Assembly: GCF_006345805.1 (NCBI RefSeq)
Contig: NW_021831714.1
Location: 1 to 35,863, forward strand
DNA from: Octopus sinensis
Lineage: Eukaryota
Direction of reading: 5' to 3'
DNA: 35,863 bases
In this document: piece by piece, positions 5,298 through 29,066 of the stretch
How the letters are laid out: every line of letters starts with the position of its first letter
Numbering within the stretch: the first letter of the stretch is position 1
Notes under the pieces: generated by a model
Database searches by the model: none
Told to the model about the DNA's origin: nothing
Seen by the model: only the letters and a program-made list of their open reading frames with translations
Translations under genes and position numbers: made by a program

Positions 5298-5760
5298 GCG
5301 CAGGAGTGGCTGTGTGGCAAGTAGCTTGCTAACCAGCCACATGGTTCCGGGTTCAGTCCCCCTGCGTGGCATCTTGGGCAAGTGTATTCTGCTATAGCTC
5401 CGGGCCGACCAAAGCCTTGTGAGTGGATTTGGTAGACGGAAACTGAAAGAAGCCTGTCGTATATATATATATATATATATAATATATATATATTATATAT
5501 ATACGACAGGCTTCTTTCAGTATATATATATTATGTATGTATGTGTTTGTGCGTCTGTGCTTGTCTCCCCAACATCGCTTGACAACCGATGCTGGTGTGT
5601 TTACGTCCCCGTAACTTAGCGGTTCGGCAAAAAGAGACCGATAGAATAAGTACTGGGCTTACAAAGAATGAGTCCCGGGGTCGATTTGCTCTCGATTAAA
5701 AGCGGTGCTCCAGCATGGCCGCAGTCAGATGACTGAAACAAGTAAAAGAGTAAAGAGTAA
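5294..5760 (+). mobile_element. tRNA-derived SINE, working family A (full length, internal microsatellite)
   Basis: Head GGCGCAGGAGTGGCTGTGTGG..GGTTCAGTCCC, central (TA)n/(TG)n and tail ..CCAGCATGGCCGCAGTC..GTAAAAGAGTAAAG. Homologous copies occur elsewhere in the window. Confidence 0.9.
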
Positions 5761-6716: not shown

Positions 6717-7097
6717 CTTTTACTCTTTTACTTGTTTCAGTCATTTGACTGCGGCCATGCTGGAGCACAGCCTTTAGTCGAGCAAATCGACCCCGGGACT
6801 TATTCTTTGTAAGCCCAGTACTTATTCTATCGGTCTCTTTTGCCAAACTGCTAAGTGACGGGGACGTAAACACCAGCGTCGGTTGTCAAGCAATGCTAGG
6901 GGGACAAACACAAACATACACGCACACATATATATACATATATACAACGGGCTTCTTTCAGTTTCCGTCAACCAAATCCACTCACAAGGCTTTGGTCGGC
7001 CCGAGGCTATAGTAGAAGACACTTGCCCAAGGTGTCACGCAGTGAGACTGAACCCGGAACCGTGTGGTTGGTAAGCAAGCTACTTACCATGCATCCA
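6717..7097 (-). mobile_element. SINE family A, near full length
   Basis: Reverse-complement match to 5294-5760 across head, microsatellite and tail. Confidence 0.9.
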
Positions 7098-8412: not shown

Positions 8413-8438
8413 AATAATAATAATAATAATAATATAAT

Positions 8439-8474
<36 letters not shown>

Positions 8475-8504
8475 TATCATTATTATTATTATTATTACTA
8501 TTAC

Positions 8505-8541
<37 letters not shown>

Positions 8542-8555
8542 ATTATTATAATTAC

Positions 8556-8609
<54 letters not shown>

Positions 8610-8640
8610 CATCATTATTGTTGTTGTTGTTGTTGTTGCT
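8413..8640. repeat. (AAT)n tract switching to (ATT)n/(GTT)n: two opposed LINE tails
   Basis: Direct reading. The polarity switches near 8475. Confidence 0.9.
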
Positions 8641-11506: not shown

Positions 11507-11816
11507 TATAATAACAATTTAATAAATAAAACATATGCATACATACATACATACATGCATATATGTACGTACCTACATCTATATGTATATATACATGCAT
11601 ATATGGGTACAGGACACCACAAAAAAAAAACGTCAGAACACAACAAGAAACGAAAACAAAAACAAACAAGGAAACAGACCTTTTTCAAACAACGTAAAAA
11701 CAGAGTACAAGCCATACAACACAACGAACATTCCCCTTCTTCAGCTGCCCCTGTTTCGACTTATTGCGTTCCTTGTGTTGTATGTCTTGTTCTCTGATTT
11801 TCCAAGTAAGTTTTAT

Positions 11817-15379: not shown

Positions 15380-16246
15380 GTTCCTACTACATAGGATTAC
15401 AGTGAATTTGGAGGCGGATACAACGGTCGTAGTGTAAGTAGTAGTGGTGGTAATGGTGGTGGTGGTGGCGGTGATGGGGTGTGTGGCATTAATCGCGTCG
15501 GTGTGGTCGTAGTATTGATGGCGATTGTGTTATTAGTGGTAGTTTTGGTGGTGGTGATAATGATGATGGAGATTGTGAAGGTGATGGCGAAGGTACTGGT
15601 GGTGGTTGTGGTGGTGATGACGGTGATGGTGGAGGCGTTGGTAGTCGTGGTGGTTACGGTGGTAACGATAAAGGTGGCGGTATTAGTAATCGTTAGTGAT
15701 GTTGTTTGTGGTGATAGTGATGGTGATGATATCGGTGGGGGCGATGGTGGTGTTGTTGCAGGAGATGGTGGTGGTTGTGGTTGTGTTCCTCGTCGTAGTG
15801 GTGGTGGTGGAAAGCGATACAGTAATGGTTATACTTACGTTTCGTTATGCTAAACGAAAAAAAAGAAAATGGCGGACTTAGTTTGAAAGAAGATTTACAA
15901 ACAGAACAAACAACAAAACAAAAACAATAAAAAAGTAAAACAAAAAGACGAAAACAAATAAATGTAATAAACAAACAATTAGAAAAAAAGGAGGAAAAAG
16001 ATTAAAAGAAATAAAAGCAAATAGAATGAAATAAATATGAAACAAAAAAGCGAATTTTAAAAAGGAAAGGAAAAAATATACTTATATTGAAGAATAAATT
16101 TATGGCTTTTAACACACTAATGAATGTGTGTATGTTTGTGTGTGTGTGTGTGTATGTACACACACATCCGAAAGATTCATAGCAAAAAGAAAGGCATCTG
16201 ACAGCTAGTAATAACATTATGTGTGTATGTATAATATACAAATACA

Positions 16247-17477: not shown

Positions 17478-17520
<43 letters not shown>

Positions 17521-17700
17521 ATGTGTGTGTGTGTGCGAATGAAGAGACACCTACACGCCCAAACAGCTATACATACACACACACACACATACATACCTCC
17601 GTAATACACAAATATTCATATATACACACACATATATATATATATATCCATATTGATACATTCATATACACACATACATAATACACACACACACACACAC

Positions 17701-17735
<35 letters not shown>
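15210..17735. repeat. Low-complexity block: (TCTA/TCCA)n, degenerate (GGT)n, A-rich, (TACA)n, (TAGA)n, a long GA-rich purine tract, (TG)n/(TA)n
   Basis: Direct reading. It explains the 356-aa SL-rich and V-rich ORFs. Confidence 0.9.
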
Positions 17736-17908
17736 TATATGGAGTATGTTGTATCATTCTTCCTATGAAAATGGAATTCTCCTCGCTTGAGATATGAAAA
17801 AACAAAAATAATACAAATCCTCCATACAAGTACCTGGCTAGTTATTCGCAAATACTCATCCACACCCATATATCTACACGTATATCTATCTACCTCTCTC
17901 TCTCTCTA

Positions 17909-18099
17909 CGATTTTTTTCCTCCGTCTTCCCTTCTCTGGATCTTTCCTTCTCCTATGTTTCCGAAGAAGAGCTCTGCTCGAAACGTAAAACTCTCCTTCT
18001 TTCCTTCTTTCCTGAGCGTCCAATAATACTATATTTGTTCCACGTTCTCGCGTTGTTGTGTTTTTTTGCTTTTTTGTGTTTTCTTGTTTGGATTAACTT

Positions 18100-18106
<7 letters not shown>
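17909..18106 (+). mobile_element. Penelope-like terminal-repeat fragment, family P1
   Basis: Second copy inverted at 19117-19335. It carries a hammerhead-like motif. The PLE assignment is inferred from that motif. Confidence 0.6.
17957..17991 (+). ncRNA. Minimal type I hammerhead-like motif HH-a (CCGAAGA core variant)
   Basis: GTTT-CCGAAGA-A-GAGC(TCT)GCTC-GAAAC-GT-A-AAAC. Stem I 4 bp, stem II 4 bp, loopless palindromic stem III ACGT, GUA triplet. Confidence 0.55.
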
Positions 18107-18132
<26 letters not shown>

Positions 18133-18138
<6 letters not shown>

Positions 18139-18424
18139 GAAAGAATGGAGTCGAACGAAGATGTTAACAAAATTCCTTTACTCTCGACATATGTTTCGAA
18201 AACAACATGGTTTCATTCCAAAGGAATAAAGGTGCATTATGCAATCTTCTCATCAGGAAAGAAAGGGAGCCTCTCTCGACAACAAGACAAACAAAAATTT
18301 CGATGACTGCCTACATGGTAAACAAAACGATAAAGAGTGTTTTTAAAAACACCGTTAGAAGAATTGACGTCAATTTTGTTAACATTTTGTTAACATCTTC
18401 GTTCGACTCCATTCTTTCATTTAT
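18133..18424. mobile_element. Penelope-like fragment P2 with a 41-bp perfect inverted repeat
   Basis: 18133-18173 and 18384-18424 are exact reverse complements. HH-b adjoins the left arm. Confidence 0.7.
18175..18266 (-). ncRNA. Type I hammerhead ribozyme motif HH-b (intact core)
   Basis: Minus strand: CCTTTCTTTC-CTGATGA-GAAGA..TTTTC-GAAAC-ATAT-GTC-GAGAG(T)AAAGG. Predicted cleavage falls between plus-strand 18186 and 18185. Confidence 0.75.
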
Positions 18425-18601
18425 TCATATAAAACACACAAATTTCTGCACATGAACCCGGAGTTTCTACCCTTGGACAGGTCGCTTCAACCGTGTTTCT
18501 GACATGAATTTGTTACCCTGGTTTCGGTTCAACGAATTTTAGAGCATATAGACTGGAGGCTTCTTTGACGTCGCCTCGTGGACATATACTTGTCCTCGGC
18601 T

Positions 18602-18696
18602 TCTCTGCTGACGAGACACGCCAGTTGTAAATAAATTTAATTTAATTTAATTAATTTGTTTACTAAAGTTTGTCGAAACTATGCATAGTCCAGAGA
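18602..18696 (+). ncRNA. Type I hammerhead ribozyme motif HH-c (intact core)
   Basis: TCTCTG-CTGACGA-GACA..TGTC-GAAAC-TATGCATA-GTC-CAGAGA. Predicted cleavage is after 18690. Confidence 0.8.
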
Positions 18697-18906
18697 TGAA
18701 AAGGGTAAATGTTTTTATTTCTCTTTCAATTTCAGAATTAGTACTATTTAGCGGTTTGAGTTTGGCTGCTCTTTCTAGTGAGTCGAATGGCCTATTAGGG
18801 CCATTCCTTATATTGTTGAATGTATATTATATAGTCTTTGACTATCTTTTCTTTCTCACTAGACCGCTGGTAGCGAAAAATTTTTTGCTACCCTTATATT
18901 TATTAA

Positions 18907-18952
<46 letters not shown>

Positions 18953-19116
18953 TGCATGAATCGTATAGAGTTACATGTTCCAAATGATGGCACTCACTCT
19001 TACACACACACACAAACACACATACAACTAGATGCTTCCATACACACGGAATCCCTCCCATAAACATATATTTAGTAAAGATATCTTTACTTACATCCAT
19101 AAGTACACGGACACGT

Positions 19117-19335
19117 ATATATTATAGTTAATCCAAACATGAAAACACAAAGAGAAAACACAACAACGCGAGGACGTGGAACAAATAAGTATTATTGGAC
19201 GCTCAGGAAAGAAAGAAAGAAGGAGGGTTCAACGTTTCGAGCGGAGCTCTTCGTCGGAAACATAGGAAAAGGAAAGATCCAGAGAAGGGAAGACGGAGGA
19301 AAGAAAATCGCCAACGGTACACACGCGGTCACATT
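19117..19335 (-). mobile_element. Penelope-like terminal-repeat fragment, family P1, second copy
   Basis: Reverse-complement match to 17909-18106, with about 25 extra 5' bases. Confidence 0.6.
19227..19261 (-). ncRNA. Minimal hammerhead-like motif HH-d (CCGACGA core variant)
   Basis: GTTT-CCGACGA-A-GAGC(TCC)GCTC-GAAAC-GT-T-GAAC on the minus strand. Confidence 0.55.
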
Positions 19336-19352
19336 TCGAATGTATATATATA

Positions 19353-19650
19353 TAGCCTCGGGCCGACCAAAGCCTTGTGAGTGGATTTGGTAGACGGAAA
19401 CTGAAAGAAGCCCGTCGTATATATGTATATATATATATGTGTGTTTGTGTGCCTGTGTTTGTCCCCCTAGCATTGTTTGACAACCGATGCTGGTGTGTTT
19501 ATGTCCCCGTCACTTAGCGGCTCGGCAAGAAAGCCCGATAGAATAAGTACTGGACTTACAAAGAATAAGTCCCGGAGTCGAGTTGCTCGATTAAAGGTGG
19601 TGCTCCAGCATGGCCGCAGTCAAATGACTGAAAAAAGTAAAAGAGTAAAA
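19353..19650 (+). mobile_element. SINE family A, 5'-truncated
   Basis: Starts at ATAGCCTCGGGCCGACC and has the full tail. Confidence 0.88.
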
Positions 19651-19665
19651 GAGAGAGAGAGAGAG

Positions 19666-19711
<46 letters not shown>

Positions 19712-20648: not shown

Positions 20649-21110
20649 GGCGCAGGTGTGGCTGTGTAGTAAGTAGCTTGCTTATCAACCACATGGTTCC
20701 GGGTTCAGTCCCATTGCGTGCCACCTTGGGCAAGTGTCTTCTGTTATAGCCTCGGGCCAACCAAAGGTTTCTAGGTGGATATGGTAGACGGAAACTGAAA
20801 GAAACCTGTCGTATATATGTATATATGTATATATATATATATAATATATATATATAATATATATATATATTTATGTATGTATGCATGTGTGTATTTGTGT
20901 GTCTGCGTTTGACCCCCCAACATCGCTTGATAACCGATGCTGGTGTGTTTAAATCCCCGTAACTTAACGGTTCGGCAAGAGAGACCGATAGAATAAGTAC
21001 TAGGGTTACAAATGATAAGTTCTGGAGTGAATTTGCTCGACTAAAGGCGGTGCTCCAGCATGGCCGCAGTCAAATGACTGAAACAAGTAAAAGAATAAAA
21101 GAATAAAGGA
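20649..21110 (+). mobile_element. SINE family A, full length
   Basis: Colinear with 5294-5760. Confidence 0.9.
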
Positions 21111-22107: not shown

Positions 22108-22263
22108 ACGACGAGCTTCTTTCAGTTTCCGTGTACCAAATCCACTCACACGGCTTTGGTTAGTTCGAGGCTATAGCAGAAGACATCCGCAGGAGGTGCC
22201 ACGCAGTGGGACTGAACCTGAAACCATGTGATTGGTAAGCAAACTTCTTACCACACAGCCACG
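22108..22263 (-). mobile_element. SINE family A head
   Basis: Reverse complement of the family A 5' half, up to the internal microsatellite. Confidence 0.85.
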
Positions 22264-23649: not shown

Positions 23650-23745
23650 ATATGTTTCTTTCATTTCTGTCTACCAAATTCAATCACAAGGCTTTGTTCG
23701 GCCCAAGGCTATAGTAGAATACACTTGCCCAAGGTTCCACGCAAA
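23650..23745 (-). mobile_element. SINE family A fragment
   Basis: CACAAGGCTTTG..GGCTATAGTAGAA..CTTGCCCAAGG match. Confidence 0.75.
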
Positions 23746-24221: not shown

Positions 24222-24355
24222 ACATTATTTACATTATTTACATTTGACGGATATTTGTCCTCATCTTGTTTGTTGTCAACACAACGTTTCGGCTGATACA
24301 CCCTAAAACCTTCTTACTAGCAATAATAATAATAATAATAATAATAATAACGATA

Positions 24356-24408
<53 letters not shown>

Positions 24409-24440
24409 AATAATAATAATGATAATATTAATAATAATAA

Positions 24441-24475
<35 letters not shown>

Positions 24476-24489
24476 TGATGATAATATTC

Positions 24490-24520
<31 letters not shown>

Positions 24521-24540
24521 TGATGATGATGATGATGATG

Positions 24541-24595
<55 letters not shown>

Positions 24596-25767: not shown

Positions 25768-26165
25768 TATTTCGTCTGTCTTTACGTTCTGGGTTCAAAT
25801 TCCGCCGACTTGTGGGTAAAAAAGAAATATGTATTTCGTCTGTCTTTATGTTCTGAGTTCAGATTCCGCCGAGGTTGACTTCGCCTTTCATCCTTTTGGG
25901 GTCGATAAATTAAGTACCAGTTGCATACTGGGGTCGATCTAATCGAATAGTCCTCTCCCCCAAAATTTCGAGCCTTGTGCCGAGAGTAGAAAAGGATATT
26001 TCGTCTGTCTTTACGTTCTGAGTTCAAATTCCGCCGAGGTCGACTTTGCTTTTTATCCTTTCGGGGTCGATCAATTAAGCAACAGTTGCATACTGCGGTC
26101 TAACTAATTAACTGGCCCCCCTCCCTCAAAATTCCAGGCCTTGTACCTAGAGTAGAAAGGATTAT
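25768..26165 (+). mobile_element. Head-to-tail trimer of 5'-truncated SINE family C units
   Basis: Units start TATTTCGTCTGTCTTTA at 25768, 25832 and 25997 (64, 165 and 164 bp). Confidence 0.85.
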
Positions 26166-26674: not shown

Positions 26675-27799
26675 CGTGAGGGCGGAATCCAGCGGTGGCC
26701 GCTGTGTCGGAATCGCGGTGCGTGAGTTCGGAACCCAGCGGTGCGCTGTGTCGGAACCGCGGTGCGTGAGTTCGGAACCCAGTGGTGAGCTGTGTCGGAA
26801 CCGCGGTGCGTCAGTTCGGAACCCAGCGGTGCGCTGTGTCGGAACCGCGGTGCGTGAGTTCGGAACCCAGCGGTGTGTTGTGTCGGAACCGCGGCGCGTG
26901 AGTTCGGAACCCAGCGGTGCGCTGTGTCGGAACCGCGGTGCGTGAGTTCGGAACCCAGCGGTGCGCTGTGTCGGAACCGCGGTGCGTGAGTTCGGAACCC
27001 AGTGGTGAGCTGTGTCGGAACCGCGGTGCGTCAGTTCGGAACCCAGCGGTGCGCTGTGTCGGAACCGCGGTGCGTGAGTTCGGAACCCAGCGGTGTGTTG
27101 TGTCGGAACCGCGGCGCGTGAGTTCGGAACCCAGCGGTGCGCTGTGTCGGAACCGCGGTGCGTGAGTTCGGAACCCAGTGGTGCGCTGTCTCGGAACCGC
27201 GGTGCGTGAGTTCGGATCCCAGCGGTGCGCTGTGTCGGAATCGCGGTGCGTGAGTTCGGAACCCAGCGGTGCGCTGTGTCGGAACCGCGGTGCGTGAGTT
27301 CGGAACCCAGCGGTGCGCTGTGTCGGAACCGCGGTGCGTGAGTTCGGAACCCAGCGGTGCGCTGTGTCGGAACCGCGGTGCGTGAGTTCGGAACCCAGCG
27401 GTGCGTTGTGTCGGAACCGCGGCGCGTGAGTTCGGAACCCAGCGGTGCGCTGTGTCGGAACCGCGGTGCGTGAGTTCGGAACCCAGCGGTGCGCTGTGTC
27501 GGAACCGCGGTGCGTGAGTTCGGAACCCAGTGGTGAGCTGTGTCGGAACCGCGGTGCGTGAGTTCGGAACCCAGCGGTGCGCTGTGTCGGAACCGCGGTG
27601 CGTGAGTTCGGAACCCAGCGGTGCGCTGTGTCGGAACCGCGGTGCGTGAGTTCGGAACCCAGCGGTGCGCTGTGTCGGAACCGCGGTGCGTGAGTTCGGA
27701 ACCCAGCGGTGCGCTGTGTCGGAACCGCGGTGCGTGAGTTCGGAACCTAGCGGTGCGCTGTGTCGGAACCGCGGTGCGTGAGTTCGGAACTCAGCGGTG
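26675..27799. repeat. GC/CpG-rich 44-bp minisatellite, about 25.5 units
   Basis: Unit GCGGTGCGTGAGTTCGGAACCCAGCGGTGCGCTGTGTCGGAACC. The register is exact from 26715 to 27771 (24 x 44). Confidence 0.97.
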
Positions 27800-28542: not shown

Positions 28543-29066
28543 TGGTCTGCATTTGGTGTTGTCCATTGCAACTTTCTAGAAGCCAATCAGAGCATTACAG
28601 CAGAGGTTTAGTGCAATCAACTCACTGAAATGCATGCTCACTTGCAAAAAATGAGACCTGCATTGGTGAATCGGTGTGGCCCAATTCTGCTCCACGATAT
28701 TGCAAAGCCACATGTTACAAGAATGACGCTGCAGAAACTCACAGACCTGGGTTACGAGACTTTACTATATCCTCCATATTCTCCTGATCTTTCACCTACT
28801 GACTACCATTTCTTAAAGCATTTGAACACATTTTTAAGTGATACAACTTTCAGGTCCAAACCTGAAGTGGAATCAGCTTTTAAAGATCTCTTATCATCAA
28901 AGCCAATAGATTTTCATCAACGAGGCATAAATAATATCGTTGATCGATGGCAGATATGCATAGGTGTTCACGGCTCATACTTTGACTAATCAAAACATTT
29001 CTGTTTTTAATTTTTCAGAATAAAATTATGTTTCTGAAATCGGCCATTATTTTCGGAACAACCTAA
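28543..29066 (+). mobile_element. mariner (DD34D) 3' half with right TIR
   Basis: WSAFGVVH..LLHDIAKPHV..PPYSPDLSPTDYHFLKHL..GSYFD* (ORF 28630-28989). TIR ends ..GGAACAACCTAA at 29066, followed by TA. Confidence 0.92.

What the first reader, a model, noticed from the sequence alone, without database searches (positions are those of the whole stretch)
17909..19335. Four hammerhead-ribozyme motifs from three unrelated families packed into 1.3 kb
HH-a (+, 17957), HH-b (-, 18175), HH-c (+, 18602) and HH-d (-, 19227) each show the type I order stem I-C(U/C)GANGA-stem II-GAAAC-stem III-NUH-stem I, with stems that pair. Two lie on each strand. The outer pair belong to convergent inverted copies (about 200 bp) of one repeat that enclose the inner two. 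Established: Penelope-like retroelements carry minimal type I hammerheads, often cleaving as dimers. Inference: this is a PLE insertion hotspot or a composite non-autonomous, retrozyme-like unit. A read-through transcript on either strand could be cut, which would matter if the window is intronic.
Basis: partly seen in the sequence, partly recalled or inferred. Interest (0 to 1): 0.85.

Follow-up and report, generated by a model that had tools for sequence, protein, structure and literature searches.

The report
Cluster of hammerhead-ribozyme retroelement relics
A 1.4-kb stretch of this repeat-rich animal genome holds four hammerhead self-cleaving RNA motifs from three different short mobile-element fragments that landed around one TA microsatellite; this is a known kind of element, but the packing is unusually dense.

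Summary
A type I hammerhead descriptor finds exactly four sites in the 35.8-kb window, all within 17957-19261, against 0.03 expected from shuffles.

HH-b (-, cut 18186/18185) and HH-c (+, cut 18690/18691) have a flawless catalytic core, G10.1-C11.1, a GUC triplet and a palindromic helix III. Rfam Hammerhead_1 aligns to both end to end, but only at 18.1 and 15.0 bits (threshold 34), because helix II carries 48-54 extra nucleotides.

HH-a and HH-d are weaker. They are two 90%-identical inverted copies of one ~190-bp repeat. They look like the minimal hammerheads of Penelope-like elements (PLEs) but have C at invariant U4, and Rfam reports nothing for them.

All four units have their 3' end against a TA-rich tract. 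No reverse transcriptase or GIY-YIG ORF, tandem array or target-site duplication is present. Unit B has perfect 41-bp inverted ends, whereas the outer copies differ by 10%.

Best reading: serial insertions of solitary, non-autonomous PLE/retrozyme-type fragments into a (TA)n site, not one composite element. No relatives could be retrieved, so covariation and activity remain untested. This is a new member of a known kind, of modest interest.

The parts
17908..18107 (+). Repeat copy A1. The unit body is CGATTTT...GGATTAACT, ending about 18098, followed by a TA-rich tail.
   Evidence: 90% identical to 19310-19116 on the other strand.
17957..17991 (+). HH-a, a minimal hammerhead-like motif. Core CCGAAGA (C at U4), extra A at 17968, helix II GAGC/GCUC, GAAA-CG-U-A, predicted cut 17987/17988, helix I of 4 bp.
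   Evidence: Descriptor hit. No Rfam hammerhead hit. The monomer MFE is a different hairpin.
18108..18132 (.). (TA)n tract. The 3' end of A1 abuts it from the left and the 3' end of unit B from the right.
18133..18424 (-). Unit B, 292 bp, 34% GC. It has perfect 41-bp inverted ends (18133-18173 and 18384-18424) and carries HH-b near its 3' end.
   Evidence: Inverted repeat found. The whole unit folds at -115 kcal/mol, z = -12.6.
18175..18266 (-). HH-b, a type I hammerhead. Core CUGAUGA at 18256-18250, a 52-nt helix II closed by GAAGA/UUUUC, GAAAC-AUAU-GUC, predicted cut 18186/18185, helix I of 5+5 bp with a bulged U.
   Evidence: Descriptor hit. Rfam RF00163 aligns over model positions 1-45, 18.1 bits, E 0.036 on a 116-nt search. 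The constrained fold is -16.8 against an MFE of -22.1 kcal/mol.
18432..18894 (+). Unit C, about 463 bp, 38% GC. The 5' boundary is uncertain. The 3' end is a hairpin GGTAGC...GCTACC that abuts (TA)n.
18602..18696 (+). HH-c, a type I hammerhead. Helix I of 6 bp, core CUGACGA at 18608-18614, a 60-nt AT-rich helix II closed by GACA/UGUC, GAAA, helix III ACUA-UGCA-UAGU, C17 at 18690, predicted cut 18690/18691.
   Evidence: Descriptor hit. Rfam RF00163 aligns over model positions 1-45, 15.0 bits, E 0.42 on a 131-nt search. The constrained hammerhead fold is -23.2 against an MFE of -25.3 kcal/mol.
18895..18950 (.). (TA)n tract at the 3' end of unit C.
   Evidence: TRF.
19116..19311 (-). Repeat copy A2, the inverted copy of A1. 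It has the same 5' boundary (CGATTTT), and its 3' end GGATTAACT is followed by ATAATATATA.
19227..19261 (-). HH-d, the same motif as HH-a. Core CCGACGA, predicted cut 19231/19230.
   Evidence: Descriptor hit. No Rfam hammerhead hit. All 4 differences from HH-a lie at positions the motif allows.
18361..18374 (.). CRE-like perfect palindrome AATTGACGTCAATT in unit B, about 110 nt upstream of the HH-b core in the sense direction. A second TTGACGTC lies at 18565-18572, about 40 nt upstream of the HH-c core.
   Evidence: These are the only TTGACGTC sites in the window: 0.81 expected, and 5 of 100 shuffles reach 3 matches.

Best explanation
The stretch is a nest of separate insertions of short, non-coding retroelement fragments. 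Each carries a type I hammerhead ribozyme (HHR) motif 50-200 nt from its 3' end. They landed in and beside one (TA)n microsatellite.

There are three sequence families:
- Unit A, two inverted copies A1 and A2, carrying HH-a and HH-d.
- Unit B, carrying HH-b.
- Unit C, carrying HH-c.

They are most likely solitary 5'-truncated or non-autonomous derivatives of Penelope-like elements (pLTR fragments, or retrozyme 'monomers'). Their RNA is copied into nicked TA-rich DNA by a PLE reverse transcriptase/GIY-YIG endonuclease supplied in trans.

Shown:
- The motifs and their statistical excess.
- The repeat structure.
- The TA junctions.
- The absence of ORFs and of tandem arrays.

Inferred:
- The PLE-type origin and the serial order of insertion. 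Unit B is young, with identical ends. A1 and A2 are older, 10% apart.
- Likely activity of each motif:
  - HH-c has a stable helix III (4 bp plus a UGCA loop) and could cut a + strand transcript on its own after C18690.
  - HH-b has a 2-bp helix III with a palindromic AUAU loop. It probably needs a second copy (a dimer), or is slow.
  - HH-a and HH-d (C4, no helix III as a monomer, buried in a 178-bp duplex in read-through RNA) are probably inactive relics.
For: 1. There are four descriptor hits against 0.03 expected, and none elsewhere in the window.

2. Several hallmarks that my descriptor did not demand are present in all three families:
   - G10.1-C11.1 and C15.2-G16.2.
   - Perfectly palindromic helix III segments ACGU, ACAUAUGU and ACUAUGCAUAGU.
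   - A GUC triplet in HH-b and HH-c.
   - An unpaired nucleotide between A9 and 10.1 in HH-a and HH-d.
   These are the features listed for metazoan PLE and repeat-type HHRs (PMC4209133; PMC3088659 Fig. S8).

3. Rfam Hammerhead_1 is the top full-length match to HH-b and is matched full-length by HH-c.

4. The HH-c hammerhead fold is within 2.1 kcal/mol of the MFE.

5. HH-a and HH-d differ at 4 of 35 motif positions (N7, loop 2, H17, and 1.1 A to G wobble). All four changes are tolerated by the motif; P is 0.006-0.016 by simulation.

6. The 3' ends of A1, A2, B and C all abut TA-rich tracts, while (TA)>=4 tracts cover only 6.4% of the window. PLEs are reported to prefer (TA)n, to be 5'-truncated and to form inverted-repeat insertion units, with the HHR near the 3' end (PMC8557442).

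7. Pairs of minimal HHRs 100-700 bp apart on opposite strands, and mostly solitary motifs, were already reported in Schistosoma. Dispersed retrozyme monomers are reported in vertebrates.

8. Units are AT-rich, 34-40% GC, as described for metazoan retrozymes.
Against: - No relatives of any unit could be retrieved, so there are no family alignments and no covariation test.
- All Rfam scores are below the gathering threshold of 34 bits, and HH-a and HH-d get no hit at all.
- No RT or GIY-YIG remnant lies in the window, so the PLE link rests on the literature, not on this sequence.
- A1 and A2 are convergent, with 5' ends outward. The usual inverted PLE arrangement has 3' ends outward.
- The 50-60-nt helix II is atypical for PLE or retrozyme HHRs.
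- The HH-b hammerhead fold is 5.3 kcal/mol above its MFE.
- Unit B, with perfect 41-bp inverted ends in a TA target, could equally be a DNA-transposon MITE.
- The host organism was not verified.
Confidence: 0.62

Rival explanations
1. The whole stretch 17908-19311 is one composite mobile element. Its ~200-bp terminal inverted repeats (A1 and A2) move the inner hammerhead units as cargo.
For: Both outer copies start at the same nucleotide (CGATTTT) and enclose the rest.
Against: There is no target-site duplication at the outer junctions. The arms are 10% diverged while the ends of unit B are identical, which points to different insertion ages. There is no other copy of the composite, or of any of its parts, in the window or in the searchable collections. 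The interior is largely microsatellite.
Confidence: 0.08
2. Unit B is a DNA-transposon-derived MITE (41-bp terminal inverted repeats, TA-rich target) that happens to carry, or has captured, a hammerhead. It is not a retroelement fragment.
For: Unit B has perfect 41-bp inverted ends flanked by TATAT on both sides and measures 292 bp. It folds as a foldback with z = -12.6.
Against: A flawless HHR with palindromic loop 3 and a GUC triplet is expected about 0.007 times per window by chance. PLE insertion units are themselves described as flanked by inverted repeats made from an inverted 5'-truncated copy, which yields the same picture. No transposase relative or family copy is available.
Confidence: 0.2
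3. HH-a and HH-d are chance look-alikes inside an ordinary repeat. Only HH-b and HH-c are true hammerheads.
For: They have C at invariant U4. Helices I and II are only 4 bp each, and there is no monomeric helix III. Rfam gives no hammerhead hit at E<=10. Alternative hairpins are more stable. The loose descriptor that admits them has a background about 4 times that of the strict one.
Against: They match the min-HHR hallmarks: the extra nucleotide after A9, G10.1-C11.1, and a palindromic 15.2-16.2. All four differences between the two copies spare the motif (P 0.006-0.016). They sit within 200-650 bp of two canonical HHRs.
Confidence: 0.3
4. All four motifs are chance matches in hairpin-rich, low-complexity DNA.
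For: The window is extremely repeat- and palindrome-rich. All Rfam scores are below threshold.
Against: There are 4 observed against 0.03 expected, and 2 against 0.007 for the strict descriptor. The additional hallmarks were not in the descriptor. Rfam Hammerhead_1 is the top hit for HH-b and aligns full-length to HH-c.
Confidence: 0.02

Closest known systems
Minimal hammerheads (min-HHRs) in the pseudo-LTRs of Penelope-like elements (Cervera & de la Pena 2014, PMC4209133)
   Same: HH-a and HH-d share these features: type I order, a helix I of 4 bp, an unpaired nucleotide between A9 and 10.1, G10.1-C11.1, and no helix III beyond a palindromic C15.2-G16.2, so that they could act only as a dimer. 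They mostly occur as solitary copies, and pairs a few hundred bp apart on opposite strands have been described. They are AT-rich and non-coding.
   Different: Position 4 is C instead of U. Helix II is 4 bp, against the reported 7-8 bp. No RT/GIY-YIG ORF or direct pLTR is nearby. The two copies are convergent rather than head-to-head.
Canonical type I hammerheads of metazoan non-LTR retrozymes and 'satellite' repeats (Cervera & de la Pena 2020, PMC7229834; Rfam RF00163)
   Same: HH-b and HH-c share these features: a perfect core, a helix I of 5-6 bp, a 4-6-bp stem closing helix II, a short helix III with a palindromic tetraloop (AUAU, UGCA), and a GUC cleavage triplet. The host unit is a few hundred bp, has low GC and is strongly self-paired.
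   Different: There is no tandem array; each is a single copy. Helix II carries a 48-54-nt extension, so loop 2 cannot be the usual small loop that contacts loop 1. Rfam scores are 15-18 bits against the 34-bit threshold.
Complex tandem/inverted PLE insertion units with (TA)n target bias (Craig et al. 2021, PMC8557442)
   Same: Unit B looks like a 5'-truncated copy preceded by a short inverted copy of its own 3' end. All units abut TA repeats. Several insertions are piled together.
   Different: The (TA)n bias was documented for Naiad-type PLEs, which lack canonical HHRs. No PLE coding sequence is present here.
Miniature inverted-repeat transposable elements (MITEs)
   Same: Unit B is 292 bp, has perfect 41-bp terminal inverted repeats, sits in TA-rich flanks and has no ORF.
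   Different: I do not know of MITEs that carry hammerheads (from memory). The target-site duplication cannot be resolved inside (TA)n.

Membership tests
Hammerhead ribozyme, type I (Rfam RF00163) | Conserved core C3-U4-G5-A6-N7-G8-A9 ... G12-A13-A14-A15.1 ... U16.1-H17 | tested here: met
   HH-b (CUGAUGA...GAAA...UC) and HH-c (CUGACGA...GAAA...UC) are perfect. HH-a and HH-d fail at U4, which is C.
Hammerhead ribozyme, type I (Rfam RF00163) | Three helices around the core, with helix I open | tested here: met
   Helix lengths I/II/III are 5(+5)/6/2 bp for HH-b and 6/4/4 bp for HH-c. HH-a and HH-d have 4/4 bp and a helix III only as a dimer.
Hammerhead ribozyme, type I (Rfam RF00163) | Covariance-model score at or above the curated gathering score (34 bits) | tested here: not met
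   No hit at gathering score. HH-b scores 18.1 bits and HH-c 15.0 bits, each with 48-54 nt inserted in helix II. HH-a and HH-d get no hit.
Hammerhead ribozyme, type I (Rfam RF00163) | Compensatory changes in the helices across related copies | not testable with these tools
   No relatives were found. The only comparison available is HH-a against HH-d: 4 differences, all tolerated, including 1.1 A to G as a wobble pair.
Hammerhead ribozyme, type I (Rfam RF00163) | Site-specific self-cleavage after H17 | not testable with these tools
   This needs in vitro transcription or mapping of RNA ends.
PLE minimal hammerhead (min-HHR) | No helix III or a minimal one, with palindromic 15.2-16.2 | tested here: met
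   HH-a and HH-d have GAAA-CG-U, and ACGU is a palindrome.
PLE minimal hammerhead (min-HHR) | An unpaired nucleotide between A9 and 10.1, and a G10.1-C11.1 pair | tested here: met
   There is an A at 17968, then G...C closing helix II.
PLE minimal hammerhead (min-HHR) | A long helix II (6-8 bp) | tested here: not met
   Helix II is GAGC/GCUC, 4 bp with a 3-nt loop.
PLE minimal hammerhead (min-HHR) | Location in the flanking repeat of an element encoding RT plus GIY-YIG endonuclease | tested here: not met
   No such ORF remnant lies in the window. The literature says most genomic motifs are solitary, so this does not exclude descent from a PLE.
Metazoan non-LTR retrozyme | Tandem repeats (two or more units of about 150-450 bp), each with a type I HHR | tested here: not met
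   No tandem or direct repeat of units B or C. They could be 'monomer' derivatives.
Metazoan non-LTR retrozyme | Low GC content and a highly self-paired unit RNA | tested here: met
   GC is 34-38%. Unit B folds with z = -12.6 and unit C with z = -3.9.
Metazoan non-LTR retrozyme | Expression as linear and circular monomer RNA | not testable with these tools
   No transcript data are available.
MITE (for unit B) | Terminal inverted repeats and a target-site duplication | tested here: inconclusive
   The 41-bp inverted ends are perfect. The flanks are TATAT on both sides, so a duplication cannot be told apart from the (TA)n target.

The most novel reading that the evidence does not exclude
HH-b and HH-c may represent lineage-specific hammerhead families with two unusual features. 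First, a 50-60-nt branched or AT-rich extension of helix II replaces the usual loop 2. Second, the carrier is a foldback unit with perfect inverted ends rather than a tandem repeat. That would be a new carrier architecture for type I hammerheads. One form would be a MITE-like DNA element. Another would be a hairpin-type, solitary retrozyme with an upstream CRE-like promoter palindrome. Standard Rfam thresholds would miss such elements, so hammerhead counts in such genomes (for example 235 loci in the giant squid) would be large underestimates.
Probability: 0.15. Interest if true: 0.55.

Novelty: new member of a known kind. Interest (0 to 1): 0.3.

Why it matters
Type I hammerheads tied to Penelope-like elements and retrozymes are already known to occur by the thousand in invertebrate genomes, so this locus adds examples rather than a principle.

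It is still useful in three ways:
- Two canonical-core hammerheads fall far below Rfam's threshold only because helix II is extended. Genome censuses by Rfam may therefore miss whole families.
- It gives a compact natural case of three families piled into one (TA)n site. That fits endonuclease target bias or self-targeting of PLE-type elements.
- The inverted outer copies would make a ~180-bp double-stranded RNA in any read-through transcript. That may matter more for the host (editing, small RNAs) than ribozyme cleavage does.

Tried and rejected
- **Rfam, whole window.** Rfam at gathering score on the whole window, and at E<=10 on 17500-19700, returned only microsatellite-driven miRNA look-alikes. 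The hammerhead model surfaced only on stretches of about 120 nt.
- **Search for relatives.** All of the following were empty, so no family alignment, covariation test or covariance model was possible:
  - translated-repeat queries against the protein collection;
  - exact look-ups of window ORFs;
  - two metagenome scans;
  - one viral scan.
- **More copies inside the window.** A sensitive BLAST gave only a T-rich low-complexity match at 15907-15992, which the alignment showed to be unrelated.
- **Relaxed descriptors.** With helix II of 3 bp, or one core mismatch allowed, extra hits appeared at 11744 (-) and 15723 (+). These are at background level and were rejected.
- **Vestigial tandem unit in B.** The repeated TGTCGAGAG has no wider homology around it.
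- **PLE coding remnants.** None found. The only Pfam hit in the window is a mariner-type DDE_3 fragment.
- **Two Pfam calls failed.** They were given raw frames containing stop codons.
- **Host organism.** My impression that the SINE-like repeats are cephalopod-like is from memory and could not be checked.
Full report
**What is there.** The window is AT-rich (36% GC) eukaryotic DNA full of microsatellites and short interspersed repeats. The only recognisable coding remnant is a mariner-type DDE_3 fragment.

In 17908-19311 the sequence reads as follows:
- repeat copy A1 (+, 17908-18107);
- a (TA)n tract (18108-18132);
- unit B (18133-18424), with perfect 41-bp inverted ends;
- unit C (about 18432-18894);
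- a second (TA)n tract (18895-18950);
- about 165 bp of CA/TA-type simple sequence;
- repeat copy A2 (-, 19311-19116), 90% identical to A1.

**Check of the observation.** I wrote a type I hammerhead descriptor with these elements: helix I >=4 bp, C[U/C]GANGA, an optional extra nucleotide, helix II >=4 bp, GAAA, helix III >=2 bp, UH.
- Three hundred dinucleotide-preserving shuffles of the window give a mean of 0.03 sites. The strict form (CUGANGA, no extra nucleotide) gives 2 observed against 0.007 expected.
- Allowing one core mismatch adds only one hit, at background level.
The descriptor was written after I had seen the candidates, so the hallmarks in the next paragraph matter more than the raw P value.

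**Quality of the motifs.** All three families show features that the descriptor did not require.
- G10.1-C11.1 and C15.2-G16.2 are present in all of them.
- The stretch from 15.1 to 16.1 is a perfect palindrome in each: ACGU, ACAUAUGU, ACUAUGCAUAGU.
- HH-b and HH-c use the GUC triplet.
- HH-a and HH-d have the unpaired nucleotide between A9 and 10.1.
- These are the traits that Cervera & de la Pena list as arguing against a random origin of PLE hammerheads. Perreault et al. show the same traits for repeat-type metazoan hammerheads, which are thought to act as dimers.

Rfam reports nothing at its gathering threshold, nor in a 2.2-kb search at E<=10. On short stretches the picture changes for two motifs.
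- Hammerhead_1 (RF00163) is the top match to HH-b, aligned over the full model (positions 1-45): 18.1 bits, E 0.036.
- It also aligns to HH-c over the full model, at 15.0 bits and E 0.42.
- The shortfall against 34 bits comes from 48-54 nt inserted in helix II.
- HH-a and HH-d get no hammerhead hit at all.

Folding results:
- HH-c's hammerhead fold costs only 2.1 kcal/mol relative to the MFE.
- HH-b's costs 5.3 kcal/mol, because its helix III has only 2 bp.
- HH-a and HH-d prefer other hairpins.
- HH-a and HH-d also carry C at position 4. From my own knowledge of classical mutagenesis (Ruffner et al. 1990, not checked here), this strongly lowers activity.
- Against a chance origin for HH-a/HH-d, the two copies differ at four of the 35 motif positions: N7, loop 2, H17, and 1.1 A to G (which keeps a wobble pair). 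All four changes are tolerated. Simulation gives P = 0.006-0.016 for this.

**What the units are.**
- None of A, B or C has another copy in the window.
- There is no tandem array.
- There is no RT or GIY-YIG remnant.
- Read in the sense of their hammerheads, all four units end at a TA-rich tract:
  - A1 and B face the same (TA)n from opposite sides;
  - C ends at the second (TA)n;
  - A2 ends at ATAATATATA.
- (TA)>=4 tracts cover only 6.4% of the window.
- The hammerheads lie about 50 nt (B), 110-120 nt (A) and 200 nt (C) from these 3' ends.

The literature describes PLE insertions as follows:
- 5'-truncated;
- often accompanied by an inverted truncated copy that produces flanking inverted repeats;
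- biased towards (TA)n;
- carrying the hammerhead near the 3' end.

It also describes most genomic min-HHRs as solitary, sometimes in pairs 100-700 bp apart on opposite strands. A 2026 preprint reports dispersed retrozyme 'monomers' and relates retrozymes to PLE pLTRs.

Unit B fits the picture of an inverted copy of its own 3' end followed by a truncated body. It fits a MITE equally well.

**Composite element or serial insertions?** The evidence favours serial insertions.
- The ends of unit B are 41/41 identical, whereas A1 and A2 differ by 10%. At that divergence, identity over 41 nt has P of about 0.013.
- The outer junctions show no target-site duplication.
- Removing B and C joins the TA tracts into one microsatellite.
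- I therefore read the locus as successive insertions into one (TA)n site, not as one mobile composite.
- One point is unexplained. A1 and A2 share the same 5' boundary and are convergent, which is not the usual PLE inverted arrangement. Two full-length insertions of a ~190-bp non-autonomous element is the simplest reading.

**Likely function.** These are probably relics.
- HH-c could cleave a + strand transcript on its own.
- HH-b probably needs dimerisation through its ACAUAUGU palindrome.
- In a read-through RNA on either strand, the outer arms pair over about 178 bp and bury HH-a or HH-d completely. Cleavage there is unlikely unless it happens co-transcriptionally.
- For one PLE, hammerhead cleavage was not needed for insertion in vitro. 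A family that spread with a crippled core (C4) is therefore conceivable.

**Limits.**
- No relatives could be found in any searchable collection. Covariation, copy number, genome-wide density and the identity of the autonomous partner all remain open.
- The host was not identified. Its repeats remind me of cephalopod SINEs, from memory only.
- Cephalopod genomes do contain Rfam-detectable type I hammerheads: 235 loci in the giant squid.

**Verdict.** This is a new member of a known kind, of modest interest.

Noticed in passing
18361-18374 and 18565-18572: The only TTGACGTC sites in the window lie in units B and C, each upstream of its hammerhead in the sense direction. They are CRE-like, and the one in unit B is part of a perfect 14-nt palindrome AATTGACGTCAATT. 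0.81 matches are expected, and 5 of 100 shuffles reach 3. They could be promoter elements of the source elements.
   Followed up: partly
18273-18281 and 18181-18189 (- strand): TGTCGAGAG occurs twice in the window, with 0.13 expected. One copy is at the HH-b cleavage site. The other is 92 nt upstream, next to the 5' strand of helix I, where it can pair with that strand as an alternative fold. There is no wider homology around the two copies.
   Followed up: partly
17909-19310: A read-through RNA on either strand is predicted to form a duplex of about 178 bp between the outer inverted copies, with a 1-kb loop. That is a long double-stranded RNA and a possible substrate for editing or small-RNA pathways.
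   Followed up: partly
18785-18816 and 18869-18902: Two GC-containing hairpins in unit C are each followed by the same CCTTATATT... sequence. This forms a 22-nt direct repeat at 77% identity, 86 nt apart.
   Followed up: no
26675-27799: A minisatellite with a 44-nt unit and 25.5 copies at 95% identity. It reads through as long spurious ORFs on both strands.
   Followed up: no
5393-5442, 6962-7011, 19351-19400, 20745-20794, 22126-22175, 23664-23713: At least six copies, on both strands and 86-98% identical over the 50 nt compared, of a SINE-like repeat. One copy starts about 40 bp outside A2. No tRNA-like gene is detected by ARAGORN.
   Followed up: no
25832-26162: Two tandem copies of a 165-nt unit at 83% identity, with a possibly tRNA-related segment (GAGTTCAAATTCCGCCGAGGTCGAC).
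   Followed up: no
28612-28986: An ORF fragment with a weak match to the DDE_3 transposase domain (mariner/Tc1 type): 17.5 bits, below the cut-off.
   Followed up: partly
8413-8619 and 24322-24592: Long (AAT)n/(ATT)n microsatellites. Together with many (TA)n, (ATCT)n and (TATG)n tracts, they produce most of the long spurious ORFs in the window.
   Followed up: no
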